A DNA stretch of 64,000 nucleotides from Macrostomum lignano (GCA_002269645.1 NIVC01000754.1:186001-250000); one strand, 5' to 3'; shown: positions 10,071 through 34,200, numbered from the stretch's first letter. Program-made: numbers and translations. Notes: generated by a model not told the origin, from the letters alone.

Positions 10071-10558
10071 GATTGATTGTTAGATTGTCACCCCGATAGC
10101 GATTGTTCAATAAATATAATTATAGCCACACGTGTATGAAGCTTAGTGTGGCAATATCCAAGTGATAAAAAAATATATATTGCATGTAACTCTTTACATT
10201 GCAGTTGACGTTTCAGTCAGAGAGATTTGCATATTTATCGCAACGAGAAACATAACAGGTTGACCACTTGAAATACTTACTGTAAGTAGTATAGAGAAAT
10301 ATTTTATCGGATAATTCAACCGGTATGGGTTGTAGAGTTCTCCTGTGTTGATTAAATAATATCTTTTTCGAATCGAAATACATTCAGTAATAAAATACCT
10401 GTTTGTTAGGGCTCTGAGGTCCACATTTCTATTAACCAGGGATTATTCAGCGGTGTTGGGCATCGACAGTTGAAAAAGTATTGACCACGTGCGAGGGTCC
10501 CAAACCAAAATTTGAATATCGATCGATGGTTTAGTCCGATACTAAAGCATCAAGTAGA

Positions 10559-15087: not shown

Positions 15088-18000
15088 TCATTCGGAAAAG
15101 AAAGGCAGGTGCACAGCTTGTAAGATTTGTGCAGGGGCTTTTGGACAATGGGGCAGAGCTGATGAGCTGGGGCTGCTGTGTGCAGCTTGGCTGCTGTGCG
15201 CGGCCTCTGCATCTCTTCCTGTCTCTCCTTCATCTGAGCGGCGCGAGCTGTGAGTTAAAGGGGGGCTGGGGTTGGGTCACAGCCAGTTGGAGCAAACAGT
15301 TGGATTTCATATTCAGTAAAACTCAGCTGCCACAGCAGCCCCACAGATTCCCAGGAACTCCCTCAAACTGTCTAAGTCTGAGCAGGGCGTCTAGTTTATC
15401 AAAGCAATTAAAAAAAAATTTTCTCTGAGCTTCAAGCTAACACCTCTCAATGCAAACCGCTCAATTAAGGTGGCGCATCTTTAGCGTGAGCACAGTGAGC
15501 CCGCATGACTGGTGATAAAATAATGCTACTCCGGTCGCACCTCTGCATGAGCACCATATCGCACGGGTATCTAAGGCTTGCCAAATTACTTTAAATTTGT
15601 ACCTGACGATGAGGAACTCGTGCCCCATCAGCTCCAATGCGGACTTTCTGCTTTTGCGGTCCATGGCGGTGCAGCGGCTGTAGAAGTCTTGCAGCTCCGC
15701 TGAGAAGCCCGTCGGCAGGGCGGGGGCGCCGCTGCTTCTCAGCCTCTCAGGCAGCGTGTACGGCATTTTGTGCTCAGCAAAGGGCCGCCTGCCCGAGGCC
15801 ATCTGGAAGACCGAGCAGCCGAACGCCCAGATGTCCGACTGTCTGCTGTACCACGGGCTGTCCGACTCTCCTGCTCCGAGCAACTCCGGAGCCAAGAAGT
15901 TCAAAGTGCCTTTGGGGGTGGCTTTGGAGTCCGAGACGTGGCTGACTGACTCCAGCTTGACTGACAGGCCGAAGTCGATCAGCTTGATTCGCGTGTTGTC
16001 AGCACAAACAATTATGTTCGAGCAGTTGATGTCTCTGTGGATCACGGGCGGCTTCCGGCTGTGCAGGTAGAGCAGCGCGCGGCAGATCTGCGAGCGGTCG
16101 GTCAGTGAGCAGTCATCATTCATGAGAACATGGAACAGGAGCATCAAGGATGCACAATGCTCACCTGCTCGCTGAAGTCTCGAATCGTCTGCTCGTCCAG
16201 CGGCTTGTTGTCGATAAACTTCTCCAAGCTTCGGCCATCCAGCAGCTCCATGAACACAACGACTGTAGCGGGCTCCGGCTGAGCCATGTGCAAGAACCTG
16301 ACGATGTTGGGATGCCGCAGTCGGCACAGGTTTCTCTCGCTCTCGACAGCTCTGTGGATCTCTTTGCTCACAGAGGTTTGGTCATCACCGAGCTGCACAG
16401 GCAGTTTGAGAGTCTTGGCAGCGCACGTGACGCCCGTGTCAGTTCGAACTTCGTGGACTTCGCCGAAGCCTCCGCGGCCAATGAGGTGAACGGCGTCCCA
16501 GCGTTCGCGGAACGGGGGGTTCGAGTGTCTGAGGGGATGTGAATTGAAGCACTGAGGGGTAATTTGCATGCTGTAGCTGTGTGTGTTGTAGCTGTGTGTG
16601 TTGTAGCTGTGTGTGCTGTAGCTGTGTGTGCTGTAGCTGTGTGTGCTGTAGCTGTGTGTGCTGTAGCTGTGTGTGCTGTAGCTGTGTGCTGTAGCTGTGT
16701 GCTGTAGCTGTGTGTGCTGTAGCTGTGTGTGCTGTAGCTGTATGTGCTGTAGCTGTGTGTGCTGTAGCTGTGTGTGCTGTAGCTGTATGTGCTGTAGCTG
16801 TGTGTGCTGTAGCTGTGTGTGCTGTAGCTGTGTGCTGTAGCTGTGTGTGCTGAAGCTGTGTTGTCTGCGGCCATTGCCTAAGAAGCTACGGCCGCGGCGA
16901 GCAAAATCCTCTGGCGCTGGCTCTCCTGCATCAGCCCACTGAGCGCCTGCGCCGTGGCCAAGGCCGAACTGTGACGCTAAATGATACGTTTCTGACTGAC
17001 TTGCCCTTCTCGGTTGTTCTGCGAACGCGTCCGCGCAAAGACTAGCTAGATGTCTTTTTGTCTGTGCTTCTCTCTGCGTCGCTATATAAATATACCTGGT
17101 ATTTAAGCTTTGTGCTGTAGCTGTGTGTGCTGAAGGAACTCACGGCATCGCCTGAGGCTCGTCGAAGTAGTTCTTGCCGTCGTACCTAAATAGGCAGTGC
17201 GGAGTAAAATTAACTACGAATTTTTAAATACTTTCTGTTTTTTGTAAAAATCTATTATGTTAGCAGAAAAACGCAAAAATTTCAGATGTTTAAATTATAA
17301 CCAACTGTAACAGCAAACTGACAGGTGTCTCACAGCTCGCAGGCAGCTGAACATTAATATTCAACTGGCAATCTGCAGTCAAACTGCACTGCAAAGTCCC
17401 TCAATGCAGCTCAGTCCCTGCTGCCCATTTAAACTACAAAAATGTAAAATTTCACACTCAGAGCAACTGCAGTCAGCTGCTCAATATTCAATCATAAATT
17501 ACAGTGTTTATCGATGATAAATAAAAATCAGAGACACATTCTCAGTTGCCATGGAAACTCACCCACGCAGCAGCTCAGCCAGTTCGCTCTTTCCCTCCTG
17601 TGTGGCCAAATCCAGCGCAGTTATGCCGTCTCTGTCCTTCAGGCTCCAATCCGCCCCTGAGTCCAGCAGAACCCGACCGACTGTGGCGGCGGAGGCGGGG
17701 GGCGCAAATAAGGCTGCCCATCTAAGGGGCGTGGATTCAAACTTATTCCTGGCATTGGCGGAGGCTCCGGCAGCCAGCAGAGCGGAGGCTGCGGCAGAAT
17801 TGCCAGCCTTGGCTGCATGGTGCAGGCAACTGTCAGCCCATTCATCCGAACAGGTGGGGTCACCCAGCTGCACCAGCTTCTCCCACAGAGCCCCATCACC
17901 GCACGAGCTGTTGTGAGCTGCTCGCATCAACGCGGTGAGACCCGCAATGTCCGGCATGTCGCAGCTGTCGCGGGTCGCCGCTCGCCGCAGCCCCGCCGAG

Positions 18001-19716
18001 TCGCCCGCCTCGGCCAGCCGCTCCAGTTCCTGTCGATCCGCCTCCTCCTGCAAAGGCGAGCGGGAATATTGAGTACAGCTGCTCAGCTGCAGCCGCATCG
18101 GCACCGCAGATGCCCCTCACCTGGTCTGTCAGGCCGGAGATCACGCCGCCTTTGATAACAAACAGCCGCATCTCCCTGCAACAGCAACAATGAGCAGCGA
18201 ATTTGCAGTTTGCTTAAATCCGATCACGAAAATAAAATAATTTGTGGGAATAAATTTTCCCGATAAATTCGGTTAACTCCAAAAAGTTTTATATTGAGTT
18301 TCCAAGAGGACTGCAGCAGCTCTGCAACAATCAGCATTGGCGAGAGCGCATCCGACTTCTCACAATCAGCTCATCTTCCATTTCTGCAGCATGAGTTTCC
18401 TTCAGTCTCACAATGTCTCACAAAGCACTCACGCACAGCCTCCCAGTTCTCCATCTGCAGCTCAACCCACACTCTCACTGCACACCGAGGCCCTACAGCT
18501 TCCATTATCGACTGAGATCAACCGGCACCCCATTGGCTGGGAGGCAGCCAGCCAATCACAGCTCTCGCCCATCAAGCAGTCAGCCCGAGACAAGCTCAGC
18601 TGACTGGCTCTGATTGGTTGGCCTGAGACTGCAGCTCTGGCCACCCTAGCCAGCCGAATGCTGCAAAACTTGATGGACACAGCAGCGAACTGCTCACTCA
18701 CCGCTCGATGTAGCTGGCCAGCTCTGAGTGGCCGCTGAGCCTCGCCAGGTCCGACGCCGTCCGACCCTCGCGTTCCTCCAGTCCGAGCAGCCGAGACCTC
18801 TTCGAGTTTCCGTGCTTCTCGCACTCATTGAACCTTTCCTGCCTGAGCAGGTGCAGCAGGTGCTTGGCGCATTTCCAGCTTCCAGTCCGCGCCGCCTCCA
18901 TCAGCGGAGTGGCGCCGTTGTCGTTCCGCAGCCACTTCGCATCGAACGACAGCAGCGTCAGCAGCCGCAGGTGGTCCCGCCGGGCTGCCAGGTGCGCAGC
19001 CGTGTCGCCGTTCGCGTCAGCCGCTTTGGGGTTCGCGCCCAGCTCAAATAAGTACAAGATGCACTTTTCAGTGTGCACGGGAGTTTCAGGAGCGTCGGCC
19101 ACCAGCATGAGGACGGTCCGACGAGCTGCATCAGCGCTGGTGACCAGCTGGCGCGTTGCCAGCCACCGCACCTGGCCGAAGTCACCTCCGATGACGTCGT
19201 GGGCGAGAGTCTTGAGATCGGCTGGTGAGTCTCCGACACTTGCCCGGTTGGTGGGGTCCGGCTTAGTGAGTTCCTGCAACTGCAATTGAGGCACCCAAGC
19301 TGCACATTCAAACATGTGAGTGAGTTCCTGCAACTGCAATTGAGACACCCAAGCTGCTCATTCAAACATGTGAGTGAGTTCCTGCAACTGCAATTGAGGC
19401 ACCCAAGCTGCACATTCAAACATGTAAGTGAGTTCCTGCAACTGCAATTGAGGCACCCAAGCTGCACATTCAAACATGTGAGTGAGTCTTTGCAACTGCA
19501 GTGGAAAAGGTATTAATGTGTTTCAATTTGGTCACTTACTTCTTCAAGTGGTGGCCTTGGTGGCTTTGGTGGTTTTGGTGGTTTTGGTGGCTTTGGTGGT
19601 TTTGGTGGCTCTCCTAGTGAACTTCGTCGTCGTATTGGTGGTGATGATGATGGTGATGGTGGTGGTGATGGTGGTGGTGATGCTGGTGGTGGTGGTAGTC
19701 GCCCTCGCTCTGCCAT
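15088..19716 (-). CDS. Ankyrin-repeat protein kinase, copy 1 (Pro-rich N-terminus, two ANK blocks, STE/MAP3K-like kinase), roughly 780 aa
   Basis: Hand-built exons: 19716-19540, 19273-18702, 18175-18121, 18047-17563, 17185-17144, 16528-16165, 16087-15603 and a tentative last exon 15247-15088. All introns are GT-AG with matching phases (0,2,0,2,2,0,2). The alternative is read-through to the stop at 15461. Confidence 0.75.
15603..16528 (-). CDS. Ser/Thr kinase domain exons of copy 1 (STE11/MEKK-like)
   Basis: Motifs GRGGFG, CAAK, LRHPNIV, HRDINCSN, DFGLS, GTLNFLAPE and DIWAFGC. A 77-nt intron lies at 16164-16088. Confidence 0.92.
16569..16860. repeat. 13-15-bp satellite (GCTGTAGCTGTGTGT)n in intron 5 of copy 1
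   Basis: Direct observation. Confidence 0.95.
16856..17110 (+). mobile_element. 5'-truncated RTE-like LINE fragment flanked by a duplication of about 25 bp
   Basis: Reads CGHCLRSYGRGEQNPLALALLHQPTERLRRGQGRTVTLNDTFLTDL, resembling the RTE C-terminal GHCxR...P...RRGR motif. TGTGCTGTAGCTGTGTGTGCTGAAG lies on both sides. The segment is absent from the paralogous intron near 29070. Confidence 0.6.
17563..18047 (-). CDS. Ankyrin-repeat exon (second ANK block) of copy 1
   Basis: GLTALMRAA, DSCLHHAAKAGN, STPLRWAA, GITALDLA. Confidence 0.9.
18702..19273 (-). CDS. Ankyrin-repeat exon (first ANK block) of copy 1
   Basis: RTVLMLVA, GDTAAHLAA, GATPLMEAA, GRTASDLARLSGH. Confidence 0.9.
19262..19500 (-). 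repeat. 54-bp tandem repeat duplicating the exon-2 splice acceptor, about 4.5 copies
   Basis: On the minus strand each unit contains CAATTGCAGTTGCAG|GAACTCACT. Confidence 0.9.
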
Positions 19717-21039
19717 GGCTGCAAGCTCAGTCCGTCAGTCGCAGGTGTCTCAGCTCAGCCCGAGAGTCCGGCAGGGCAGCGGCCGCCTCTGCAGCAGATT
19801 TTATTGGCCATGGAGCAGCTGCAGCGAATTCCTTCTCACCCTGCCTTTCTGCCTCTCCCATTGGCTCTGAGGGAACAGCAGAACTGCTGCAATGTCAGTG
19901 CGTGGCTACTTGAAGTAGTCAGTGTGCGATAGACGATTTTCTTGCAAACTGGTGAAAATAAAGTTTCAAAATGAATAACATAAATAATTTTTTTTTGAAG
20001 CCAGCTCCATTTATCAATATTGCATTTCGTAATTGGAAAATACGAGCACTTTGTTGCAGTGAAGCAGATCAGTGCAAACATAAATAGTTTGAGTACATTT
20101 TTGTCCATCAAAAGTGTTCTGCTGAGACTCAACTACGAGACTCGGACTGCTACTCAACAGTTTCACAAAGTCACAACTGTTACTTCTGCTCCAAATATGT
20201 CACTGACAAAAAGTGCTTTAAGTCGCAACTGCACTGGCTGGAAACTCTCAGAGCTGCTGCTTGGTAAGTTTGTAAAAGTTGTTTGTAGTAAAATAATTAT
20301 TTTACAGTTTTTTTACTTTGCTGACATAAAGATTGTCAGGGCTGCTGTGGGGCAGATTCGCTGACATAAATATTGTCAGGGCTGCTGTGGGGCAGATTTC
20401 TGGAAAGAGTAGAAACAGAAAATCTCAGAGAAGAGAGGCTGGAGGTAATCTCTGAAGAGGCATAGACATAAACATTCATACACATAAGCATAAAAAGGCC
20501 TAAACAAAAAGAACCACCAGCGTAAACCAAAATAAATTAAAGATGCTTATACATTAAGAAAGGTCAATGCAATTATTTAGAATATCCGACAGCAACTTAA
20601 ATATAATTTCAATCAATGTTTCTGGAAAAGCGAGGGAAGAATTCAACAATGTACTTTTATGAAATATTCTGGAATCTTAAGTGTGGGTTCCTCAGTTTCA
20701 GAGAAGAGCAGCGAGGGCTGCGGTTGAGCGACCCGAGCTGCTGCCGAAACTCTCGAAGGCTTGCCGAATTACAGGCGGATCTACTTTGCCAAATGAAGTT
20801 GGTATTCTTGCACGGTAATTAGCCGAATTGAGGGATTTCGAGCGGAAATTCCATATATATTGCTTCAAGCAGCCACTGTTACCACAACAACCAATTCGCA
20901 GATAAGAAAGCGAACAATTTCTGGCTCTGAGCAATCGACCTGTTCAGTTCAGTGAATTCACAACTGAGCAGCTTGTTTTGCTCCTTCTGGATCGAAATTT
21001 CAGCGACATTCCTGTAAAGCAACTTTTTGATAGGTTGGA

Positions 21040-21980
21040 ACATCACCATGACCCCCTGCTGTTCGCATTTCCTATGCTGGCTGCACTCAGATCAACAATA
21101 GGGAAGGCAATTCAGTAGGGAATGTCCTGGACATAGGCATGTGCTCTCCCAATCTAGTACATTTCGTTAGTGAGATGCTGGTCGGTAAAGACAGTGACCA
21201 TCACCTCCCGATAGTCAATAAGGTATTTTAGACTCCAACTCCAAGTTGCTCCCGAATAAAACTCCCAAGAGTTTCTTGATCACCTAGCTAGTGGGAAGCC
21301 TTTTGGTGTGACCTTCAGGATAATCTAGACAATATTATCAGCAGCATTATCCGCTTCCATATTTCCCCTCAATGACCATTGAAAAAGCCATCGATAATGT
21401 TACAGAGAAAATGCAGAAAACAATTACCGAAGTTGTCTCAGATCGTGAAACCACGGAGCCGCTGCCTCCGGATATTATCTGTAAAATCAAACACAGAAGA
21501 AACCTCAGCAAAACTTATGAAAAAGACCAGGATTGATAATTTTAGAGTTCTGACTAAACAACTTCTAAGGCGATCCTTTAAAGGATGCAGCATTGTGAAA
21601 AATTGAGGACTTACGTAAAACGTCGCTAAAACCAGCTGTAGAATGAAACCCCGAAGATTCTGGGTCAATATCAAAAAGATGACGGAGAGTCCCTCAAACC
21701 CATCTTCTTCTCCACCCTCAGTTACAAGGGAAACTCAGCTGAGACTGAAGAGGAGACTGCACACCTGTTTCAAGATTTCCATGAAGCTCAGATGCAGCCT
21801 CACGCAGCAGGGATTCCAAGCTCTATCAGGAAATCAAGGACATGCATTGAGTCCGAGGAAATATTTCTCCTTCATGATAGCATTATCAGAGCCTCTCTTA
21901 TCACCGGGACAGGCGTGATTCTGATGACCCCGACAGAGAGGACACTGAGTCAGGTATACCGAATATTCTTGACACAGATA
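21040..21980 (+). mobile_element. Decayed LINE ORF2 fragment (AP-endonuclease C-terminus and linker)
   Basis: Translates to GNSVGNVLDIGMCSPNLVHFVSEMLVGKDSDHHLP (xLD...SDHxP endonuclease motif) and later KPRRFWVNIKKM. Many stops and frameshifts. Confidence 0.55.
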
Positions 21981-21983
21981 TAC

Positions 21984-24900
21984 TCATACTAATGCAAATT
22001 TGAAAGCTAAGATACAGAGGAGCTCCGGTGTTAGGCTTTCTGTTCTCCGGGTTCTTAATTTATCCGGGGGACACTGCAAAGCAAAATTATTGTCGCTTTG
22101 CGATAACCTACCCTTCGCCGTGTTGCATGGCTTCAGGCGATTGAAATGCACCACCCTTCGCCGTCGTGCATTGGCCTCGTGCTGAATGCAGTAGGTGACG
22201 TCCGAGATCTGCTTTTTAACGCGCCATGGCCCAGTCCACCACCGATGAAATTTTCGGCTCTCGCCTCGCTTCAGCGCCGGGTTGTGCAGCCAGACCAGAT
22301 CGTCCTCGCTGAATGCCTCGCCGTGGCACCTCCTGTCGTACGCTGCCTTCTGGTGCAGTTGCGCTGCCTCCAAGTTTTGTCGCGCCCTCTCGTGCGATGT
22401 CTGCAGCCGGCTCCGCAGCTCGGCCACACATTCACAAGGACGTTGCCAATCCGGTGCCAGACCTCCGTACGCCAAGTCCAGTGGTAGTCGCAGTTCCCGG
22501 CCGAAATGCATCACCGAAGGTGTCTGACCAGTCGACTTGTGGACTGAAGTGCGGTAGCCCATCAGTGCAATCTGCAGATAAAGATCCCAGTCTCGCTGGA
22601 TTCTCGTTCACCCATGCTCGCAGCAGCTGCACCAGTGTTCGGTTCATCCGTTACGCAACCGCCGTCTCCTTCAGGGTGGTAGCCTGTCGTCCGAGTCTTG
22701 TCGATTTTCAGCAGCCGCATCGTCTCTTGAAACAGCTGCGACTCCCAGTTCCGACCCTGGTCGGTGTGTACTGACTGCGGGACTCCAAAGCGAGCCACCC
22801 ACTCGTTGACAAACGTCCGGGCTGTGGTCTCAGCATCTTGAGACGGTAGTGGAAAGGCCTCAGTCCACTTGCTGAAGGTGTCGATGACTACCAGGATGAC
22901 TGAATTTCCACGATCGGTCCTCGGCAGGCCTCCCATGAAGTCCATTTCTAGTCGCTGTCCAACGCTGCCGACCGCCACGCTCTGTAGAGGCGCCCACCTG
23001 TGCTGGCCAGAATCCTTCAGTGTTGCGCATTCGAGGCACGCAGCACACCAGTCAGTCACATCTGCTGTCATTCCAGGCCAGTAGAGTCGCGCTTTGATCT
23101 TTTCAATGGTCTTTTGCGGTCCGCCGTGGCTGCCGCTCGTTCCAGTATGAGCTTCGACAAAAACATCGCGCTGTAGACTTTCTAGCACCAGCAGCTGCTG
23201 ACAAAAGGCGCTGCCATCTTCGGATTCCCATCGGCGGCACAGCAGTCCGTTCACCAGTGTCAGCCGCTTAAACTCGGACAGCAATTGCCGCTGCCGATTG
23301 CTCCAGCCGTCCCTCTCTGCCTTGTCCGGTGGTTGACCATCTCGCAAGCAGTTCGCCAGCTGCTGCATGCACCGATCCCCTGCCTGTGCTCGTCGAATCG
23401 CGCTGTCGTCATTGAACTCGACAGCGAGCGCAGAGCCACTGCACAGGCAAGGTCCTTTTCGACACGGTCGCCGACTAAGTGCGTCTGCATTTCCATGTTT
23501 CTCGCCCTTGTGGTACTCCGTCTGGTAGTCGAATTCGCTTAGCTTATCCAGCCACCGTGCCAGCTGACCATCGGGATCTCGGAAGCGCAGAAGATGGATC
23601 AGCGAGGCGTGATCAGTACGTAGTGTGAATCTTTTTCCTAACAAGTAGCTGCGATAGTGACCGACGAAGTGCACAATTGCCAGCAGCTCACGCCTCGTTG
23701 TGCAGTAATTTCTCTCTGCTTTGGACAGAATGCGACTGCCGTATGCCACCACCTGCGTCCTGCCACCACGGCGCTCTTGAAGAACTCCGGAGATGGCCAC
23801 GCTAGAGGCATCGGTATCCAGCACGAACTCAGCGACTTCTGCGAATGTCGGCATGATGAGAACTGGGCTGGAAGTAAGGCACTGCTTTAGGCGATTAAAT
23901 GCTGCTGAGCATTCGAGAGTCCAGCGGAAGGTCACGTCCTTTTGCGTTAGCTTGTACAGCGGTTCAGCAATCTCACTGCAGTTTTTAACGAAATGACGAT
24001 AGTAGCCACATAACCCCAGGAATTGTCGCACTTCTGAACGATCTTCGGGCGTTGGCCACTCCTGCACTGCTTTCACCTTGTCCGGGTCAGTGGTCACGCC
24101 ATCTTTTGAGATTCGAAAGCCAAGAAATGAGATCTCCTGATAGCACAAGTGGCACTTGGTTGGCTTCAACTTCAGGTTAGCGGTTCTGAATTTCTGCAAC
24201 ACAAACTCAAGACGCCGCAGATGCTCCTCGAATCCTTTCGAAATGATGACAACGTCGTCAAGAAATGACAGGCACACTTCCCATCGGAGGCCCTTCAGAA
24301 CGAGTTCCATCAGCCTTGAAAACGTGGCAGGACCCTTGCACACACCTTGCGGTAGTCTCTTGTACTGGAATAATCCCTGTGGCGCAGGAAATGCTGCTTT
24401 TGAGCGACTCTCTGAGTCCAGCATCACCTGGGTGTACCCGCTAGTGAAGTCGAGCGTTGAGAACATTGTGGATCCTGCGAGAGCATCGATCTGATCGCTG
24501 GTGTGAGGCAGTGGATGACTGTCTTTGACGGTCACGGAGTTGAGCAGTCTGAAGTCGTTCACGAAGCGCAAACTGCCGTCCTCCTTCTTCACCAGAATGA
24601 TCGGGCTCGACCACGGAGAATTCGAAGGCTCTACGATGTCGTCTCATACCATCTGCTCGACCATCTCTGACACAGCTCGCTGGTTCGGCGGCGACAATCG
24701 ACGAGGAGGCACTCTGTTGGGTTTCGCCGACCCGGTGTCAATTTTGTGGTCAAGGAGTGAAGTGCAGCCCAGGTCGTTTGGACTTTTCGAGAACACATCC
24801 TGGTACTGATGCAGAAGTTCTTTGACACACTGAACTTGATTGGCTGTCAGATGTTTCTCATCAATGTGCACATTTGGTGCACACTCAGCGCTTTGACCTT

Positions 24901-25723
24901 TCACTGTCTCAACTTGCATTGACGACTCTGCATCGGCACCATCAGACATCGGCTCAAAAGTCCCCAGTCTTGTTCCGGGGTAAGATGTATGCGGCTTGGT
25001 GTCCGCATTGACATAGTGAACGGCGATGAGTCCTCCTCGCAACACCGAGAGGCTGCGCGCTCCACACATGACCGTGGATATGTCCTTCGAATTGTCAGGC
25101 TCAAATATGCTGCACTCACCATCAACAGCTGCAGCTGACTCACTTGCCAATCTCGCTGGGAAAACAATTTCGTGAACAGCGGGCACGGTTGTCCTGTCTG
25201 CTACCTCAACGGCGAATACACAGGTGCTGGCTGCCGATGACTCCATTTTTACTTGCTGACCGCACACAGTGAGCGTTTGGCGATTGCAGTCGATGACGCA
25301 GCCACAGTTTGCCAGGAAATCTGCACCCAGCAAAAAATCCTTGGCCAGATTGTCGACAACCAAAACTCTTTGTCGAACCGTTGCCACACCGAAACTTAGC
25401 TGCACTTCCTGCCAACCACAGGCAGCCAAATAGTTACCGTCTGCCAGCTTCAACTGCACCGGAGTCGTCAAAGGCAGGAGCCTCTCATTCAGCTTGCGAA
25501 ACACGGAACTTGACATCAGAGACTGGGAACAGCCAGTGTCAACTAGACAGCTGGCAGGGACACACATCGGCAGGATGCGACAGTTTACCAGCATGTTGGC
25601 ACCAGTGGCTGAGCAGGACACCTCCACGACTGGTTGCGCCGGGATTCTCACTTGCGGAACGGCACCCGGCGGTCGCCGCTCCATCGAAGTTTCCTGACTT
25701 CTGAGTGCAAAATCTTTGAACAT
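21984..25723 (-). pseudogene. pol: pol of gypsy C (protease, RT, RNase H, integrase with GPY/F motif), disrupted
   Basis: LVDTGCS; LPQG...FLDDVV; LDTDAS; H-H-C-C zinc finger; LEMDFMG, HTDQG; WTGPWRV. Confidence 0.92.
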
Positions 25724-26489
25724 GGCCCGGCCTACCGCACTTCCAGCATGTCACAACTTTGCGTCTGTCGCCGCTCTGACGATGATCCTGGTCCTTTGAC
25801 TGCCAGCGGCTGAGCTTGTTGGACAGCTCCTTCAGAGACCGTTGAATTCCGACTGCAAAGGCTTCGGGAACCTCAGCAGCTAGAGCCGTAGTGGTGTCTA
25901 TTTGCGACTGTTTCGATTCCACGAATCGCCCTGTTTCAACTGTATCTGCGAATGTCGCCTTTGGCTGCATCTGCGTCTGCATTCGCACGGCTGGGTCCCT
26001 CAATCCGGATAGAAGCCGACCTTTGAGCAGCTCGTCCTTCGCCGTCACTGACGTCTCCTACTCGGGACCAGCTTTCGTCTCCATCAGACTCGGGAACGCA
26101 CGCTTTGCCGCAACGATCAGGGCATCGGAATAGTCTGCAACCGACTGACCGTCCTTTTGAGTCAGATTGAAGAACTGCGCCTGCAGCTCAGCAGAGGATG
26201 TTGATGGCCGAAATCGATTTTTCAGAGCCTTCTCAAAGTCGTCGTAGGACAGGGCAGCATCCAAATTGCTGGCCGCTTGATATGATTTGTCGTCGAGGAA
26301 TGACAGCAGAGCATTCTTGCGCTGATCCACAGGAAGAGATGATGCAAAATTGTTGAATCGCGCCAGCCAAAGTTCAAAGTCTTGTTCATGCTGGTATTGA
26401 GGCGGCCGCAAAAACATGTTGGCAAAACTAGCTTGGGGCTGAGTCACCGCCACTGTAGGGCTCTCTGCACTGCCTTCATTTTCAGTCAT
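25700..26489 (-). pseudogene. gag: gag of gypsy C with in-frame TAG near 26058
   Basis: ORFs 26058-26507 and 25539-26048 are in one frame. CCHC knuckle CWKCGRPGHVQRFC. Confidence 0.85.
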
Positions 26490-26507
26490 AGCCGCCGCTG
26501 CCACCAA

Positions 26508-26677
26508 TGTAAGAACAAGCGAAAACGAGAAATAGGCTTAAGGCGTAGACCGACTCTTGGCTGCCCCGGGCGCCAAGGCACTGACTTGTATATTATGGTT
26601 GTACAGCGAGCAAATGTACATACGCGTTGAGCTAGTTAACTTGCGCACACACAATTAACTAAGCAAACCATCTTACA
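26508..26677 (-). repeat. 5' LTR of gypsy C (170 bp)
   Basis: TG...CA termini with TGTAAG/CTTACA inverted ends, followed by a PBS. Confidence 0.8.
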
Positions 26678-27224
26678 GTTATATATATTTCACTTTAAGC
26701 AGCTGTTTTGAATTTGATGAATTTCAATTATAGATACGAGTACAAGTGTTTCTAATTTTACTACTTTTCTACATCAAGTTCCTGAAAGTATGTCATGTCA
26801 GCATTTTTTCTACCATGTTGACATGAGATCACCATTTTATCCCCTTTATCCCCTGGGACCCCGATGATGGGACCCGGATGGGATGTCTCGGCGATTCTAG
26901 TCGTCTGGGCCGACAAGTTATCGATTGCAGTCGGTTTGGTCCGGAGCTGAACTTCGAGCTCCATTCTAGTGCTTAAGTTGACATCCCTTTTCAATTCAGA
27001 GGCGTAGAGCATTTTCAGTCCTCATTAGTTGATTAAAAATCCTAAAAACTTACAAAGCACAACAGTAGAGGACGTAAAAATACCTAAGCTATTGTGTAAG
27101 TTTCAGCACTGCAGACGCTCAAAGCAATGGAAACGCTAACAGAAGAACCAGAAGGGACTATGTTGCTTTAAGAAATCATGGGCCAAATACTGTAGACAAA
27201 ACTGTCGAAAACAGAAACCTTAAC

Positions 27225-28253
27225 TTACTCCAATAACTGATCAAATTTCAAAATCCTTGATTCCAAAAAACCTCTCGGCCTAACGCCGCCAGTTATACTA
27301 CTCGAAGTATTTCGAAGTAATACTTTGAAGTGTTCCGTCAGGAACTCGTGCTCCAGCAGCTCCTGTGCTGACTTTCTGCTTTTGCGATCCTTGGCAGTGC
27401 AGCGACTGTAGAAATCCCTCAGCTCTGCGGATCGGCCGTCCGGCAGTGCGGGGGCGCCGCTGTTTGCGAGGCTCCATGCGACTTGATAAACGCTTCGAGT
27501 GCCTCTGAACGGCCTCGCGCCAGACGCCATCTGGAAGACCGAGCAGCCGAACGCCCAGATGTCCGACTCTCTGCTGTACTGCACGCTGTCCGACTCTCCC
27601 GCTCCGAGCAGCTCTGGTGCCATGAAGTTCTGAGTGCCTTTGGGTGACTGAGTGGAGGCTGAGATGTGGCTGACTGACTGCTCCAGCTTGACTGACAGGC
27701 CGAAGTCGATCAGCTTGATTCGCATGTTGTCAGCACAAACAATTATGTTCGAGCAGTTGATGTCTCTGTGGATCACGGGCGGCTGCCGGCTGTGCAGGTA
27801 GAGCAGCGCGCGGCAGATCTGCGAGCGGTCGGTCGGTGAGCAGCCATCATTCATGAGAACATGGAACAGGAGCATCAAGGATGCACAATGCTCACCTGCT
27901 TGCTGAAGTCTCGAATCTTTGGCTCGTTCAGCGGCTTGTTGTCGATAAGCCTCTCCAAGCTTCGGCCGTCCAGCAGCTCCATAAACACAACGACTGTGGC
28001 GGGCTCCGGCTGAGCCATGTGCAAGAACCTGACGATGTTGGGATGCCGCAGTCGGCACAGGTTTCTCTCGCTCTCGACAGCTCTGTGGATCTCTTTGCTC
28101 ACAGAGGTTTGGTCATCACCGAGCTGCACAGGCAGTTTGAGAGTCTTGGCAGCGCACGTGACGCCCGTGTCAGTTCGAACTTCGTGGACTTCGCCGAAGC
28201 CTCCGCGGCCGATGAGGCGAACGGCGTCCCAGCGGAATGGTGAGCCTTCGGAT
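27225..28253 (-). CDS. Ser/Thr kinase domain exons of copy 2
   Basis: GRGGFG, CAAK, HRDINCSN, DFGLS, GTQNFMAPE, DIWAFGC. The 77-nt intron is in the same position as in copy 1. Confidence 0.92.
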
Positions 28254-31200
28254 CTGACAGACGCAAATTGAGGCAATGAGAGACAAATTGCATGCTGTAG
28301 CTGTGTGTGCTGTAGCTGTGTGTGCTGTTGCTTTGTGTGCTGTTGCTTTGTGTGCTGTAGCTGTGTGTGCTGTAGCTGTGTGTGCTGTTGCTGTGTGTGC
28401 TGTAGCTGTGTGTGCTGTTGCTGTGTGTGCTGTAGCTGTGTGTGCTGTAGCTGTGTGTGCTGTAGCTGTGTGTGCTGTTGCTTTGTGTGCTGTAGCTGTG
28501 TGTGCTGTAGCTGTGTGTGCTGTAGCTGTGTGTGCTGTAGCTGTGTGTGCTATAGCTGTGTGTGCTGTAGCTGTGTGTGCTGTTGCTGTGTGTGCTGTTG
28601 CTTTGTGTGCTGTTGCTTTGTGTGCTGTTGCTTTGTGTGCTGTTGCTTTGTGTGCTGTAGCTGTGTGTGCTGTTGCTTTGTGTGCTGTTGCTGTGTGTGC
28701 TGTTGCTTTGTGTGCTGTAGCTGTGTGTGCTGTAGCTGTGTGTGCTGTTGCTGTGTGTGCTGTTGCTTTGTGTGCTGTAGCTGTGTGTGCTGTAGCTGTG
28801 TGTGCTGTAGCTGTGTGTGCTGTAGCTGTGTGTGCTATAGCTGTGTGTGCTGTAGCTGTGTGTGCTGTTGCTGTGTGTGCTGTTGCTTTGTGTGCTGTTG
28901 CTTTGTGTGCTGTTGCTTTGTGTGCTGTTGCTTTGTGTGCTGTAGCTGTGTATGCTGTTGCTTTGTGTGCTGTAGCTGTGTGTGCTGTAGCTGTGTGCTG
29001 TAGCTGTGTGTGCTGTAGCTGTGTGTGCTGTAGCTGTGTGCTGTAGCTGTGTGTGCTGTAGCTGTGTGCTAAAGGAACTCACGGCAGTGCCAGAGGCTCG
29101 TCGAAGTAAATCTTGCCGTCGTACCTAAATAGGCAGGTGAAACTCAGATGAAAGCCCATGCTCTGTACCTTAGTTCTTTCTTTTGTTAAAATAATTTATG
29201 AAATGGAATTCATAAATACATTCTGCTTTATGGTAAAAGTCCGTAATACAAGCGTATTATCAGAAAAGCAAATTTCAGACGTGGAGTTTAAACTCAACTG
29301 TCACAGCAAGAATGCTTGCTGTTGTCTCATAGCTCGCAGGCAGCTGAACATTAATATTCAACTGGAATCTGCAGTCAAACTGCACTGCAAACTCCCTCAA
29401 TGCAGCTCAGTCAGTGTCTGCTGCCCATTTAAACTACAAAAATATAAAAATTCCCACTCAGAGTAACGGCAGTCAGCTGCTCAATATTCAATCATAAATT
29501 ACAGCATGTTTATCAATGATAAATCAAAGTCAGAGAGACATTCTCAGTCGCCATGGAAACTCACCCACGCAGCAGCTCAGCCAGTTCGTTCCTTCCCTTT
29601 TGTGTGGTCAAATCCAGCGCAGTCCTGCCGCTTCTATCCTTCAGACGCCAATCCGCCCCTGAGTCCAGCAGAAGCCGACCGACTGTGGCGGCGGTGGCGG
29701 GGGGCGCAAAGGCTGCCTCCATGAGTGGCGTCAATTCACGCAGACCTTCCCTGGCATTGGCGGAGGCTCCGGCAGCCAGCAGGGCGGAGGCTGCGGCAAA
29801 ATTGCCAGCCCCGGCTGCCCAGTGCAGGCAACTGTCAGCCACTCTATCCGCACAGGTGGGGTCACCCAGCTGCACCAGCTGCTCCCAAAGAGCCTCATCA
29901 CCGCACGAGCTGTTCTGAGCTGCCCACATCAAAGCGGTCCAACCCCAAGAGTCAGGCAGGTCGCAGTTGCCGCGGGTCGCCGCTCGCCGCAGCCCCGCCG
30001 AGTCGCCCGCCTTGGCCAGCCGCTGCAGTTCCTGTCGATCCGCCTCCTCCTGCAAAGACGAGCGGGAAATTTGAGCACAGCTGCTCAGCTGCAGCCGCAT
30101 CGGCACCGCAGATGCCGCTCACCTGGGCTGTCAGGTCGGAGATCCTTCCATCTGCATTCATAACCAGCCGTATCTCCCTGCAACAGCAAAAATGACCAAC
30201 GAATTAGCAATTTTCTCAAATCCAATAATATGCACGATCGCCAAAATCAAAATTTTAGATGTAAGATAGAATTGTCAGGATAGATTTGTGGTGGTAGCTG
30301 CTAGCTAGAGCTAGCGTTGTTGCACTTTACCCAATCATATCCTCGTTTTGTCTCTGGTAGCAACCAGCTATACGTTCTTAAGCTTTCGCTCTCAGCCTCT
30401 CACTCATGTTGTAATTTCCTATGCTTAAATAAACTCTGTGCTGCTTCAACATTATTGCCAAAGTGCCGACAGCTTCGTTCAAACTACGACAATGGCGTCG
30501 CGGCTTGGCAATCTGGATCTTACAGACACGGTTCATGCATTAACCTGGATTAAGGAATTCAAAGCCTTGGCTCGAACCAAGAAGTGGGAAGATAAAGAAA
30601 CAGAATGACAAATCACGGACAACTTTTTAGAGCTCTGTGGTCTAGCAGCTCTCGAAAAAGTTACTCATCTTGTCGCTCCAAAAGAAGTGGAAGCATACAC
30701 TTTTGCGGAGCTAGAGACTGCCATTACGAACTTTCTGCAACCCCAAAAGCACCTTGTCGTTGCTGAGAGAACTGAATTCTTTACGCTACGTTACGCCCAT
30801 AATGAGCCCATTACGAAGTTCCTTTCTCGCTTCAGGAAGGGGACCACGTACTGCGAGTTCGATGCTCTAAAAACCTGCACCAGCCCGGAAGAGGAAATGG
30901 TACGTCTGATGCTCATCTCTGGCCTGCAGGACCCAGAAGATCAACGACGCCTTCTGGGAGCCATGCAAACGAAAGACTTGAAGATCACCGAAATCGTGGA
31001 TATTGTCAGGACTACCGAAAGTAGAAGGCATGAGGGGGCTTTTGGGACAAAATTTTTCACATCCTCCATAATCCCAGTAAATCCATCCATATTATCCCCG
31101 ACAGAATCAGAAAAAAAGGGGGGTCGCACTCGCTCACAAAACGTCCTCCATAATCCCATTAAATCCATCCATATTATCCCTGACAGAATCAGAGCATTAT

Positions 31201-34200
31201 CCCTGACAGAATCAGAGCATAACAGGTGTCCACTAACACCTGTTATGCTCACTGACACAGACATAATCCACCAACATCCACCCATAGCATCTTCGAAACA
31301 ATCAGAAAATAATCTGCATTCTTCTCCCCACATTCAATCCGAAGCGTTGAAACCAGATCCCTAAAACTTTAAATCCCCTAACCCAGGGTCCTTACCCTTT
31401 GAAAAAAAATTAAATTTTCTCTAAAAATGTTTCCAGTTGTCTCTTCAGGTTCCTATTATACTCAGCCTCATCTATTGTATAAATCCAAGTACCGTTGCAA
31501 ACTAGAATGCAGCGAGTACATGAGAAAATATTGGCCCGGCGTTGATGTCAATGTCCCTAATATTAATCAAGCACTTAAATCTCACTGGTTTGAAAAACAC
31601 GGACTATTCATTAACAATTTTGACAGCTATTATAACTTTGCTGAAGTTATAAGGCAGTTGTAGTAGCCAACTAAAAGGTTGTACCCTGTAGAGTGCAGAC
31701 GCAAGATCTAAAAAATACTGACTAAATCATGTGCAGCATAAAGCGGCTCGTATTTGTAAGCGATAGCTTACTGATAGTAAAGCTATTTGAACATGGTGCG
31801 AATTCCTCACATGGTGGACTAGAAAATGTCGCCATGTGCAAGGGCGTATAAATAGCAGTTCCACTCAGCTGGCTAGAGGTGGAGCCGACCTCGCGTGGCT
31901 ATGACTGACTGACGAAAGCAAAAAAAGCCCAAAACCGGTCTCAGTCTGCCCCGCATGGTTCGATTCCCACTGATAACATGATTTTCACGAACGTTCGTAA
32001 AAATCATGTGCAGCATAAAGCGGCTCTCAGTGGTTACATGATTTTTACGAACTTTCGTAAAAATCATGTGCAGCATAAAGCGGCTCTCAGTGGTTACAAG
32101 TTTTCTCGAACGTTCGTGAAAATCATGTGCAGCATAGAGAAAAAAAGCTTGCCCAGCTCAAGGATTCCTAAACTAGCTCAAAGGATCCCTCGCCTAACTT
32201 CACAAACGCCCATTTAGTTCCTTGTTTAAACCCCCAGCCTTCTCAACCCCCAGCTCTTTCAGCAGAACTCCTAGTTTTTTCCTTGGCGCGTGCAGTACAA
32301 AGCCCACCCCGCCCTCTCTCCCCGTACACCAACCCCCGACGCACACCCCCAACCCCAGTTTTGTCTTACCAAAAATAACCGCCTTGACTAATTTCCTAGC
32401 AATAGACTCGCGAAATCCGCTTGAAGCCCCTATATTGTCTAGTCTCCTAAGCATTTCTTTGTCCCAACGATTCTTCTCCTCAGGAAAATCTCTATATTTA
32501 ACATCGTGCCACATGCAGACAGAGTCTAGCTCGTTCACAGGCTCATGCCCAGGATTTGGATTATTGTTTTTATCTAACTGTATTTCAAGTGGATTCAAAG
32601 GCCCGCAATATTTATAGCCGGGAAGTGTCCAGCCTTTGTTTGGATGAGGAAGCTTTTCTATCAGTCCATGTGAATCTATTTTACCACCAGAGCGTTGCAT
32701 TATTTTATTTAAAATTTTCTTTTTAAAAAAATGACAGATCAGAAACTTAAAAAAACTCTACTACAGCGACAAAGGATTCTTTGTAGGAAAAAATGCAGTC
32801 ACCAAACTCACAGAACTAAGTAAGGAACCAAAAGCTAAAGTAGAAAAGTGGCTCTCTAAGCAAGCAGTCTACCAAGTCTATTTCCCACCAGTAAAATTTG
32901 AAAGGCCCCATTTCAGTATTTATAAACCTAATGAAGCGCACCAAGCAGACCTTCTGTTTCTCCCCAATGACTCGGGCTACAAGTATGCTCTCACAATTAC
33001 AGACGTTGCCTCCAGATATAAGGAAGCGAGACCGCTTAAGACGAAGAAGTCAGAAGCAGTTGCAGCCGCCCTTCAAGATATTTATAAAAACTCTCCGCTC
33101 ACATACCCCCAAATCTTTATGACCGACCCGGGTAAAGAATTCTATGGGGCAGTCAAATCCCTTATGGAAAAGAAAAATACAAAAATTCGCTATGGCAGAA
33201 CAAACTTGCACAGAGACCAAGCGTACGTTGAGAGATTCAATCTAACTCTAGCCAAGAGGCTATTCACTAAGCAGTCAGCTGAAGAGCTGAAACTAAAAAG
33301 TGGTCAGTACTATACCAAGTGAACAGACCGGCTCCCCACTGTTATAGAGCAACTGAACAATGAAGTCACGCGCATGACTGGATTGAAACCATCCCATGCA
33401 ATTAAACAAGACACTGTCAAACTTAAGGCAACTCATAGAACAGACAACAACACGACAACCCCACACATCACACGCAACACAAAACACACCTCGAACTACC
33501 CTAAGCTTCCAGCAGTTGAATCACCATACATACTGACAAACTCTGAGGTTCTACGCTTTTTATATCTACCTGGAGAGCTAGAGAAGGACACTAAAAGAAG
33601 AGCTACAGATCCATACTTCAGCCTTGATGTACATAAAATAGACAGACATTTTACCTCCGACTCCAGTGACTATTTCTTTTTATCTCAAGCCTTTAACCCT
33701 AAATTCCCCACACGGTCATTCACTAGAGCTGAACTCCTAGTGATACCAGCTGACACAGAAATTAATTAAAATATTAAAATAAAAAAATGACAAAGATTGA
33801 AACCAGAACCATCAATAAACTCAATAAAATCATTGAATCAAAGAAACCAGGTCTTATATCAATAAAAGGTGTCAAAGTTAAGGTTGATCACACACAGCAA
33901 ATAGTTCAATGTAATGAGCAAAGACACAGCATCACAGATGAAAAGTCAGGAGGAATCCTACCATTAGCAGCTCTTATTCCAATCATTGCAGGCGCTGTAA
34001 GTGCCGCAGGTGGTGTAGCTGGAGGTGTAGCAACTGCTGTTAAAGCTGGGAATGATAGAGCCCACCAGCTGGGATTGCAAAAGATTGCAAGAGATAAAGG
34101 TATAACAATTAAGGCAGGAGAGGGCTGCCCGGATTTTGATGATCGTGATGATTGTGATGATTGTGAGCATGAAAATTATATAAGCAAGTCTGACATTGTC

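What the first reader, a model, noticed from the sequence alone, without database searches (positions are those of the whole stretch)
15088..30177. Tandem ankyrin-kinase paralogs whose differences cluster on predicted binding surfaces
Seen: the first ANK exon and the kinase N-lobe are almost identical between copies. The second ANK exon differs at the repeat loops and first helices: DIAGLTALMRAAH vs DSWGWTALMWAAQ, SDEWADSCLHHAAKA vs ADRVADSCLHWAAGA, NKFESTPLRWAA vs EGLRELTPLMEAA, DRDGIT vs DRSGRT. The kinase differs in the activation segment (VSDSKATPKGTLNFL vs ISASTQSPKGTQNFM) and the alphaF-alphaG region (AEHKMPYTLPERLRS vs RGTRSVYQVAWSLAN). Established: those ANK positions form the ligand-binding face, and those kinase regions contribute to substrate selection. 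Inference: a diversifying intracellular sensor-kinase family (variable ANK recogniser plus MAP3K-like output), possibly immune or self/non-self. I do not recognise this architecture as a named gene.
Basis: partly seen in the sequence, partly recalled or inferred. Interest (0 to 1): 0.78.

Follow-up and report, generated by a model that had tools for sequence, protein, structure and literature searches.

The report
Flatworm ankyrin-kinase genes with hypervariable binding face
Two neighbouring, unannotated genes of the flatworm Macrostomum lignano belong to a large species-specific family in which one ankyrin domain changes fast at the positions ankyrin repeats use to grip partners, while the attached kinase is conserved, which looks like a germline-encoded intracellular recognition system.

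Summary
The window is Macrostomum lignano contig NIVC01000754.1. It holds two intact minus-strand ankyrin-kinase genes, A (775 aa) and B (720 aa), with GT-AG at every junction.

- **Coordinates:** the span is incomplete. B's first ankyrin exon lies at 54926-55503, behind a 24.7 kb intron full of mobile elements.
- **Block differences:** these reflect mosaic history. Introns track exons: 96-98% identity around exon E1, 84-88% around E2, a 212-bp identical tract in the kinase, and 72-75% in the kinase 3' half.
- **ANK claim:** it holds. Across 12 paralogous copies of ankyrin exon 2, whole-exon omega is 1.2. M2a beats M1a (LRT 199), with 16% of sites at omega about 7. Of the 20 selected sites, 17 sit at repeat positions 2, 3, 5, 10 and 13 of four consecutive repeats, the canonical binding face.
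- **Kinase claim:** it fails. The kinase C-lobe has omega 0.26 and no selected class, and the A/B differences there have dS of 0.8-1.7. They are old cassette types under purifying selection.
- **Family:** it is seen only in Macrostomum. Paralogues fuse the same ankyrin module to a caspase.

An immune or self/non-self role is inference.

The parts
19540..19716 (-). Copy A exon E0 (my model): ATG plus a Pro-rich, repeat-expanded N-terminus (MAERGR...PPLEE)
   Evidence: ORF with ATG and a GTAAGT donor. The start resembles MAQRGK/MAEQ of paralogues P0005 and P0008. No transcript evidence.
18702..19279 (-). Copy A exon E1: first, conserved ankyrin domain (about 4 repeats)
   Evidence: Pfam Ank_2 1.4e-17. 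GT-AG junctions. 97.8% identical to B's E1.
18121..18175 (-). Copy A mini-exon E1b (55 nt), linker between the two ankyrin domains
   Evidence: Needed to keep the reading frame. AG/GT sites. Present in paralogue proteins as REMRLVV...GLTAQ.
17563..18047 (-). Copy A exon E2: second, hypervariable ankyrin domain (cap plus 4 repeats)
   Evidence: Pfam Ank_2 1e-19. 100% identical to the E2 part of P0015. Positively selected sites.
17144..17185 (-). Copy A mini-exon E2b (42 nt, YDGKNYFDEPQAM)
   Evidence: tblastn with the P0015 tail. AG/GT sites. In frame whether included or skipped.
16165..16528 (-). Copy A exon E3: kinase N-lobe
   Evidence: Pfam Pkinase. Contains the 212-bp tract identical to B (16268-16479).
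15461..16087 (-). Copy A exon E4: kinase C-lobe to the stop codon. A conserved phase-2 GT donor at 15603 could splice onward.
   Evidence: Pfam Pkinase 2e-30. The donor sits where tandem-kinase paralogues continue. No second kinase lies downstream in the window.
57280..57290 (-). Copy B first coding exon (ATGCAGTCTCG)
   Evidence: Matches the MQS(R) start of annotated model P0015. GTAAGT donor.
55616..55655 (-). Copy B exon E0 (RKAKRGPTQFTDEK)
   Evidence: Matches P0015. AG/GT sites.
54926..55503 (-). Copy B exon E1: first ankyrin domain, outside the span given in the finding
   Evidence: Pfam Ank_2 3.7e-14. 96.8% DNA identity to the A region including the intron. 100% identical to P0015.
30178..54925 (.). 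Copy B intron between E1 and E1b: 24.7 kb of nested mobile elements
   Evidence: Homology to A breaks at A 18224/18297. RT, PLA2-like and A32-like ATPase ORFs.
30123..30177 (-). Copy B mini-exon E1b
   Evidence: In frame with AG/GT sites. 72.7% identical to A's E1b.
29565..30049 (-). Copy B exon E2: second, hypervariable ankyrin domain
   Evidence: Pfam Ank_2 2e-23. dN 0.147 against dS 0.118 versus A.
29083..29124 (-). Copy B mini-exon E2b (YDGKIYFDEPLAL)
   Evidence: tblastn and splice sites.
27896..28253 (-). Copy B exon E3: kinase N-lobe
   Evidence: Pfam Pkinase.
27225..27818 (-). Copy B exon E4: kinase C-lobe to the stop codon
   Evidence: Pfam Pkinase 1.4e-33. ORF intact.
21984..26507 (-). 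Ty3/gypsy-type LTR retroelement in the spacer between the two genes
   Evidence: RVT_1, RNase H and integrase domains. gag/protease-like ORFs.

Best explanation
The locus holds two intact tandem members of a large family seen only in Macrostomum. No public protein or gene model represents either ANK-kinase gene.

Architecture. Each protein is soluble and has four parts: a conserved four-repeat ankyrin domain (exon E1), a helical linker, a second four-repeat ankyrin domain (exon E2), and a STE/MAP3K-like Ser/Thr kinase. In other paralogues the same ankyrin module is fused to a caspase instead.

Shown:
- The second ankyrin domain evolves under strong diversifying selection at repeat positions 2, 3, 5, 10 and 13. 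These are the beta-turn and inner-helix face that ankyrin repeats use to bind partners.
- Its framework, the first ankyrin domain core and the kinase are conserved.
- The two copies are mosaics shaped by gene conversion or recombination within the family. That explains why some blocks are nearly identical and others old.

Inferred mechanism. The variable ankyrin face binds a variable ligand, perhaps a pathogen, mobile-element or non-self protein. Ligand binding relieves autoinhibition or clusters the protein. The constant kinase (or, in paralogues, the caspase) then signals stress or cell death.
For: Identity and structure:
- The window is 100% identical to M. lignano NIVC01000754.1.
- Both ORFs are complete, with GT-AG at all 13 introns.
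- Pfam finds Ank and Pkinase domains.
- No 19-residue window reaches a Kyte-Doolittle mean above 1.2.
- The AF2 model of the ankyrin module has pLDDT 93.5 and pTM 0.91. Its best fold matches are two-domain DARPin fusions and tankyrase ARCs.

Family:
- More than 80 M. lignano database entries. No named hit outside Macrostomum exceeds 42% identity, and four unnamed short contigs reach 57-72%.
- Paralogues carry a caspase domain (PF00656), tandem kinases or a Ras domain.

Selection (12 E2 copies from 8 contigs):
- M0 omega is 1.20. M2a vs M1a gives LRT 198.8, p = 7e-44, with 16% of sites at omega 7.2.
- The signal holds in three sub-segments, each with its own tree (LRT 49, 77, 88).
- pN exceeds pS over the whole exon in 45 of 66 pairs.
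- Posterior mean omega is about 7 at positions 2, 3, 5 and 13, 4 at position 10, and 0.4-1.6 at nearly all other positions (2.5 at position 1).
- 17 of 20 selected sites fall in the 20 a-priori binding columns (p = 3.6e-17).
- Those positions are the ones randomised in a synthetic ANK library, where they form a continuous binding surface (PMC4308713).
- Trp and Arg dominate at those positions.

Controls: E1 omega 0.71 with only 3.7% of sites selected, in loops. E3 omega 0.46. E4 omega 0.26 with LRT 2.5, not significant.

Mosaic history: intron identity tracks exon identity, and a 212-bp tract is identical (0 of 10,000 permutations reach that length). A and B are not each other's nearest relatives by dS in E1, E2 or E4; in E3 B is A's nearest, but A is not B's.

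Kinase: the Gly loop, beta3 Lys, alphaC Glu, HRD Asp, Asn, DFG and APE are all present.
Against: - No transcript or database protein joins the ANK and kinase exons of these two particular copies. The only annotated model here is a chimera of B's E1 with A's E2.
- Site models assume one tree and a constant synonymous rate. The family clearly recombines. Same-amino-acid codon pairs show about 2-fold more synonymous differences at the selected codons (0.25 vs 0.13).
- The catalytic-loop Lys of HRDxK is replaced by Asn (HRDINCSN) in the whole family, so kinase activity is unproven.
- Ligand, expression pattern and any immune role are entirely untested.
- My codon-model code is home-made. I checked it only against NG86 counts and the internal controls.
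Confidence: 0.62

Rival explanations
1. Same family and same selection, but not immunity. The variable ankyrin face tracks fast-evolving endogenous partners, such as mobile-element proteins, reproductive or germline proteins, or co-diversifying paralogue-specific substrates. The family would then be a regulatory or genome-defence system rather than a pathogen or allorecognition system.
For: - The genes sit in a region dense with transposons and satellites.
- Nothing in the sequence points to a specific ligand.
- The species is a hermaphrodite known (my own knowledge) for rapid evolution of reproduction-related genes.
Against: - No signal peptide or membrane segment, so a secreted reproductive role is unlikely.
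- Fusion of the same module to caspases fits a death or defence output better than housekeeping regulation.
Confidence: 0.2
2. The hypervariability is driven by mutation or gene conversion rather than by selection. Short conversion tracts from the many ANK-only donor modules, or a locally raised mutation rate, scramble the loop codons, and omega > 1 is an artefact.
For: - Clear gene conversion and mosaicism in the family.
- ANK-only E1-E2 modules lie in tandem upstream of a full gene in L002.
- Synonymous differences are about 2-fold higher at the selected codons.
Against: - A 2-fold synonymous excess cannot give omega of about 7.
- Among codon pairs differing at one base, the nonsynonymous:synonymous ratio is 3.3 at the a-priori canonical positions (2, 3, 5, 13, 14, 33) against 1.8 elsewhere in E2. 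At the selected sites it is 11.6 against 1.5, a partly circular comparison.
- Variable codons alternate with invariant framework codons at single-residue spacing, which conversion tracts would not produce.
- Exon E4 is strongly mosaic yet gives no false positive.
Confidence: 0.1
3. Relaxed constraint or decaying duplicates. One or both copies are pseudogenes, and exon 2 drifts neutrally (omega about 1).
For: - The pairwise A/B omega for E2 is 1.24, not far from 1.
- Intron divergence (15%) is similar to exon divergence (12%).
- Neither copy is annotated.
- B carries a 24.7 kb transposon-filled intron.
- A has lost the downstream second kinase that its closest paralogue type has.
Against: - All 13 E2 copies, and both full genes, have intact frames and splice sites.
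- The periodic omega pattern, with the framework at about 0.5 and the surface at about 7, is not neutral drift.
- The kinase exons of A and B are under purifying selection (omega 0.38-0.52).
Confidence: 0.06
4. Assembly artefact. The two 'paralogues' are mis-joined haplotypes or homeologues of one gene in this polyploid-like genome.
For: The M. lignano assemblies are known (my own knowledge) to contain duplicated material. The annotation joins exons across the two copies.
Against: - The copies lie on one contig with different transposon insertions and different 5' and 3' ends.
- They differ by 2-28% block by block.
- Similar tandem arrays occur on other contigs.
Confidence: 0.02

Closest known systems
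Platyhelminth ANK-caspases, and the M. lignano caspase with a kinase-like pro-domain (Genome Biol Evol 2024, PMC11463336)
   Same: Paralogues of these two genes carry the same two-domain ankyrin module in front of a caspase (P0025, P0027, P0040-44), or ANK + kinase + caspase (P0028). That paper reports ankyrin pro-domain caspases as a flatworm-specific clade, and notes one M. lignano caspase with a kinase-like pro-domain.
   Different: The two genes here have no caspase domain and end in the kinase. The paper describes neither ANK-kinase-only genes, nor the size of the Macrostomum family, nor any hypervariability. It treats ANK caspases as a feature of parasitic flatworms.
Ankyrin-repeat sensor domains of fungal NOD-like receptors (Genome Biol Evol 2014, PMC4986451)
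   Same: An intracellular multi-copy family with a repeat domain as presumed recogniser. [quoted passage not shown] There is concerted evolution and repeat or cassette exchange, and effector domains are swapped, kinase included.
   Different: There is no NACHT or NB-ARC nucleotide-binding domain here (Pfam). The ankyrin domain is N-terminal and the effector C-terminal. Variation is between paralogous genes rather than between near-identical repeats within one gene. The host is an animal.
Synthetic ankyrin binder libraries (DARPins; ANK-N5C, PMC4308713)
   Same: The naturally hypervariable positions (2, 3, 5, 10, 13) are the ones chosen for randomisation in the ANK-N5C library, where they form one continuous binding surface. 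The best fold matches of the module are DARPin-DARPin fusions.
   Different: Those are engineered proteins with consensus frameworks and no effector domain. Here the diversity is germline-encoded across paralogues.
MAP3K5/ASK1 and MAP3K2 (STE-group kinases)
   Same: They are the best solved-structure matches of the kinase domain: 104 bits, E = 8e-29, full-length alignment with the catalytic Asp, Asn, DFG and APE conserved.
   Different: The match rests on a single full-length alignment of modest score. WNK, STE20, PLK and PAK kinases follow closely. There are no ASK-type flanking domains. The catalytic loop reads HRDINCSN instead of HRDIKGDN.
ILK and TNNI3K (animal proteins with N-terminal ankyrin repeats and a C-terminal kinase-like domain; my own knowledge)
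   Same: The domain order is the same: ankyrin repeats, then a kinase fold.
   Different: Those are conserved single-copy genes, and ILK is a pseudokinase. Neither appears among the best 60 solved-structure matches. Here the family is species-specific, multi-copy and hypervariable.

Membership tests
Ankyrin-repeat proteins (Pfam clan Ank) | Tandem ~33-residue helix-turn-helix repeats with beta-turn loops | tested here: met
   Ank_2 at E = 1e-17 to 2e-23 in both ankyrin exons of both copies. The AF2 model has pLDDT 93.5 with paired helices at repeat spacing. Foldseek matches DARPins, tankyrase ARCs and ankyrin-B.
Eukaryotic protein kinases, catalytically competent | Gly-rich loop, beta3 Lys, alphaC Glu, HRD Asp, catalytic Asn, DFG, APE | tested here: met
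   GRGGFGEV, CAAK, ESE, HRD, N, DFG and APE are present in A and B. Pkinase at E = 4e-48 and 2e-51.
Eukaryotic protein kinases, catalytically competent | Catalytic-loop Lys (HRDxKxxN, Ser/Thr type) or Arg (HRDxxxRN, Tyr type) | tested here: not met
   The loop is HRDINCSN in A, B and the family consensus. Activity must be assayed.
MAP3K (ASK/MEKK, STE group) | Kinase domain closest to MAP3Ks, and orthology or shared accessory domains | tested here: inconclusive
   The best PDB hits are MAP3K5 and MAP3K2 (E about 1e-28), but WNK1, MAP2K5 and TNIK follow at 1e-24. No phylogeny was made and no ASK-type flanking domains were found.
Platyhelminth ANK-caspases | Caspase p20/p10 (Peptidase_C14) domain after the ankyrin pro-domain | tested here: not met
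   No PF00656 in A or B. It is present in paralogues with the same ankyrin module.
NLR/STAND receptors | Central NACHT or NB-ARC NTPase domain | tested here: not met
   No such Pfam hit in A or B, nor in the precomputed domain lists of the M. lignano family members P0001-P0052.
RIPK4/ANKK1-type kinases | N-terminal kinase followed by C-terminal ankyrin repeats | tested here: not met
   The domain order is reversed here: ankyrin repeats in the N-terminal half (to about residue 430), kinase at 459-726 in A.
Diversifying recognition families (operational class) | Multi-copy, clustered genes, with a site class of omega > 1 on the ligand-binding surface and a conserved signalling part | tested here: met
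Diversifying recognition families (operational class) | Demonstrated ligand, or a response to infection or non-self | not testable with these tools
   No expression or binding data were available.

The most novel reading that the evidence does not exclude
The family could be a combinatorial, ankyrin-based recognition system. Tandem ANK cassettes, including ANK-only E1-E2 modules, would be mixed either by cross-module splicing of read-through transcripts or by gene conversion from donor cassettes. Two independent gene models, P0015 here and P0005 in L002, already join exon E1 of one module to exon E2 of the next. The result would be many receptor specificities feeding a shared kinase or caspase death or stress output: an ankyrin analogue of Dscam- or VLR-style diversity in a flatworm.
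Probability: 0.12. Interest if true: 0.9.

Novelty: new variant of a known kind. Interest (0 to 1): 0.68.

Why it matters
Flatworms lack the classical death-domain and extrinsic apoptosis machinery (PMC11463336), and their intracellular pathogen sensing is poorly understood. This family has dozens of paralogues. Each has one conserved and one hypervariable ankyrin domain, wired to a kinase or a caspase. That makes it a concrete candidate for a germline-encoded recognition repertoire in an experimentally tractable regenerating animal in which, to my knowledge, RNAi and transgenesis are established.

The natural variable positions coincide with those that protein engineers randomise to make ankyrin binders. 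Evolution therefore seems to have arrived at the same library design, and the family offers a natural test bed for how ankyrin surfaces acquire new specificities.

The case also shows that block-wise identity between tandem paralogues can come from gene conversion, while true diversifying selection acts at single-residue resolution inside one block.

Tried and rejected
1. I first assumed both copies lay inside the given span. The self-comparison showed that B's first ANK exon is 24.7 kb upstream.
2. A direct E1-to-E2 splice breaks the frame. The 55-nt exon E1b resolves it.
3. I looked for a second kinase downstream of A, as in tandem-kinase paralogues P0014 and P0001. There is none in the window.
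4. Class-wise Nei-Gojobori pN/pS at the binding codons gave 1.0. Multi-hit codons inflate pS, so this is uninformative. I replaced it with likelihood site models, single-difference counts and same-amino-acid synonymous counts.
5. I searched with exon E1 alone for relatives outside Macrostomum, such as Schistosoma ANK-caspases. Only M. lignano entries and four short unnamed contigs turned up. The word-based prefilter may miss distant relatives.
6. I looked for database proteins identical to A's or B's kinase or to B's E2, as a proxy for expression. There are none above 94%.
7. Pfam gave no hit for the polymerase-like and capsid-candidate ORFs of the DNA element in B's intron.
8. I did not run a full-length structure prediction. 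The tool returns no coordinates or inter-domain error, so ANK-kinase contacts could not be read.
9. Literature searches found the ANK-caspase paper but nothing on ANK-kinase genes or on hypervariability in Macrostomum.

Full report
**What is there**

The window is eukaryotic. It is 100% identical over 56.9 kb to contig NIVC01000754.1 of the Macrostomum lignano assembly GCA_002269645.1, in reverse orientation.

A six-frame ORF list, Pfam and a self-comparison show two paralogous ankyrin + protein-kinase genes on the minus strand. I built exon models by hand from reading frames, GT-AG sites and paralogue proteins.

| Exon | Copy A | Copy B |
|---|---|---|
| E-1 (ATG exon) | – | 57290-57280 |
| E0 | 19716-19540 | 55655-55616 |
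| E1 | 19279-18702 | 55503-54926 |
| E1b | 18175-18121 | 30177-30123 |
| E2 | 18047-17563 | 30049-29565 |
| E2b | 17185-17144 | 29124-29083 |
| E3 | 16528-16165 | 28253-27896 |
| E4 | 16087-15461 | 27818-27225 |

Both give uninterrupted ORFs (A 775 aa, B 720 aa) with canonical splice sites at every junction. In both, the ankyrin repeats occupy the N-terminal half (to about residue 430 in A and 385 in B). The kinase lies at 459-726 in A and 415-683 in B. No 19-residue window reaches a Kyte-Doolittle mean above 1.2.

B's first three exons lie outside the span given in the finding. Its E1-E1b intron (30178-54925) is filled with nested mobile elements. A gypsy-type retroelement (21984-26507) separates the two genes.

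**Check of the observation**

E1 is 97.8% identical between copies, and the kinase N-lobe contains a 212-bp perfectly identical tract.

Per-exon Nei-Gojobori values for A against B:

| Exon | dS | dN |
|---|---|---|
| E1 | 0.042 | 0.017 |
| E2 | 0.118 | 0.147 |
| E3 | 0.10 | 0.05 |
| E4 | 0.41 | 0.155 |

In the alphaF-alphaG part of E4, dS rises to 0.8-1.7 and omega is 0.25-0.4.

The introns tell the same block-wise story:
- E1 block: 96-97% identity.
- E2 block: 84-85% identity.
- E3-E4 intron: 97% identity.

By synonymous distance, A and B are not each other's nearest relatives in E1, E2 or E4. In E3, B is A's nearest copy, but A is not B's. A's kinase tail is 92% identical to the first kinase of the tandem-kinase paralogue P0014 and only about 69% to the rest.

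So the coarse pattern of some blocks identical and others different reflects mosaic history (gene conversion or recombination in a multigene family), not selection. The kinase differences are old cassette types kept under purifying selection.

**The family**

A search of 5.8 billion proteins returned 52 M. lignano proteins, followed by only generic kinases at about 27-31% identity. A second search with E1 alone added about 30 more M. lignano entries and four unnamed short contigs.

Members combine the same two-domain ankyrin module with one kinase, with tandem kinases (P0001, P0014), with a caspase (P0025, P0027, P0040-44), or with kinase plus caspase (P0028). In P0020 a Ras domain precedes the ankyrin-kinase part. 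Other members put a different ankyrin array in front of the same kinase (P0030, P0037).

A 2024 paper describes flatworm ankyrin-pro-domain caspases and mentions one M. lignano caspase with a kinase-like pro-domain. It does not describe the ANK-kinase genes or any hypervariability.

The only gene annotated in this locus is Mlig007725g10 (P0015). It is a chimera of B's 5' exons, E1 and E1b with A's E2 and E2b. Neither kinase is annotated.

**Test of diversifying selection**

I fetched eight further loci and extracted 13 E2, 11 usable E1 and 10 kinase exon copies, all with open frames. I wrote a Goldman-Yang codon likelihood program with F3x4 frequencies, an NJ topology and all branch lengths optimised.

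| Exon | Copies | M0 omega | M2a vs M1a LRT | Selected class |
|---|---|---|---|---|
| E2 | 12 | 1.20 | 198.8 (p = 7e-44) | 16% of sites, omega 7.2 |
| E1 | 11 | 0.71 | 94.9 | 3.7% of sites, in loops |
| E3 | 9 | 0.46 | 20.8 | one linker site |
| E4 | 9 | 0.26 | 2.5 (n.s.) | none |

Further checks on E2:
- Three sub-segments, each with its own tree, give LRT 49, 77 and 88.
- Whole-exon pN exceeds pS in 45 of 66 pairs.
- Among codon pairs differing at one base, the nonsynonymous:synonymous ratio is 397:121 at the a-priori canonical positions (2, 3, 5, 13, 14, 33), against 1304:734 elsewhere.

**Where the selected sites lie**

I put the four E2 repeats into the standard 33-residue register. Posterior mean omega is about 7 at positions 2, 3, 5 and 13, and 4 at position 10. 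It is 0.4-1.6 at nearly all other positions (2.5 at position 1).

Of the 20 sites with P > 0.9, 17 fall in the 20 columns at positions 2, 3, 5, 10 and 13 (p = 3.6e-17). Sixteen of the 34 A/B differences do the same (p = 1.6e-9).

These are the positions chosen for randomisation in a synthetic ankyrin library, where they form one continuous binding surface on the beta-turns and helix 1 (PMC4308713). They are also the region where fungal NLR ankyrin repeats show positive selection (PMC4986451).

An AlphaFold model of the ankyrin module (P0015, which contains A's E2) has pLDDT 93.5. It places helix 1 at positions 6-12 of each repeat, which confirms the register. Its best fold matches are two-domain DARPin fusions and tankyrase ARC clusters. 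Trp and Arg are the commonest residues at the variable positions.

**The kinase**

The best solved relatives are MAP3K5/ASK1 and MAP3K2 (E about 1e-28), followed by WNK, MAP2K5 and STE20-type kinases. All core catalytic residues are present. The catalytic loop, however, reads HRDINCSN throughout the family and lacks the usual Lys. Activity therefore needs an assay.

**Interpretation**

Shown:
- The gene structures.
- Membership of a family seen only in Macrostomum.
- The mosaic history of the two copies.
- Strong, periodic diversifying selection on the binding face of the second ankyrin domain.
- Purifying selection on the kinase.

Inferred: the variable face binds variable ligands, and binding switches on the kinase (or the caspase in paralogues) by relief of autoinhibition or by clustering.

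An immune, allorecognition or genome-defence role is plausible but untested.

**Caveats**

- There is no transcript evidence for these two copies.
- Recombination and a 2-fold synonymous excess at the selected codons could inflate the site-model signal, though they cannot create it.
- The codon program is my own.

**Open puzzle**

Two independent gene models (P0015 here, P0005 in L002) join E1 of one module to E2 of the next. This could be transcript-assembly chimerism or real cassette-like splicing.

Noticed in passing
window 31016-45262: A DNA element of about 14.2 kb, bounded by 443-bp inverted repeats (31016-31458 and 44820-45262, 99.3% identical). It is inserted in the gag-like gene of an LTR element inside copy B's intron. 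It encodes a parvovirus-type PLA2-like domain (32200-32700), an A32-like packaging ATPase (40082-40882) and polymerase-B-like ORFs with a YTDTDS motif (35347-37901). It looks like a recently inserted Polinton/Maverick-like or virus-like element. I examined it ORF by ORF only; the sequence was neither printed nor assembled.
   Followed up: partly
window 30332-54120: An outer LTR-type retroelement with direct repeats 30332-30492 and 53957-54120 (87%). Its gag begins at 30687 and resumes after the inserted DNA element at 45247-47337. A second nested LTR element lies at 47501-52709 (216-bp LTRs, 94% identical; RT at 48808-49737).
   Followed up: partly
window 57290-17140, and L002 10001-17354: Two NCBI gene models join ankyrin exon 1 of one tandem module to ankyrin exon 2 of the next module downstream: P0015 (B's E1 and E1b with A's E2) and P0005 (E1 at 10470 with E2 at 15239 in L002). 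They are either chimeric transcript assemblies or cassette-like splicing of read-through transcripts.
   Followed up: partly
window 16569-16861, 28293-29068, 55718-56756: The same 15-nt microsatellite (TGCTGTAGCTGTGTG)n sits in the E2b-E3 intron of both copies and in B's first intron. It is also fused to the 5' end of an E1 exon in L002 (14028), so the repeat appears to travel with, or seed rearrangements in, this family.
   Followed up: no
window 19265-19500: A 54-nt tandem repeat (4.4 copies) duplicates the E1 splice acceptor of copy A in frame. It offers four alternative acceptors, each adding 18 residues. Copy B has about 1.5 copies.
   Followed up: no
window 15603: Copy A keeps a phase-2 GT donor just after HEFLIV. 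Tandem-kinase paralogues (P0014, P0001) splice to a second kinase domain at that point, but no second kinase lies downstream in the window. A may be a truncated tandem-kinase gene.
   Followed up: yes
window 5348-10070; 10546-11412; 14140-14906; 59081-60218; 61032-62081; 62293-63211: Six satellite arrays, with periods of 27, 16/31, 40, 24/70, 17 and 20/52 nt. The first is 4.7 kb long, C-rich, with a GC skew of -0.76.
   Followed up: no
window 58325-58813 (+): An ORF on the opposite strand has weak (33%) similarity to the family's kinase N-lobe and no Pfam hit. It may be a diverged or decayed kinase fragment.
   Followed up: partly
L002 1-17354: On another contig, three ankyrin modules (E1-E2) stand in tandem, and only the last is followed by kinase exons. 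ANK-only modules therefore exist next to full genes.
   Followed up: partly
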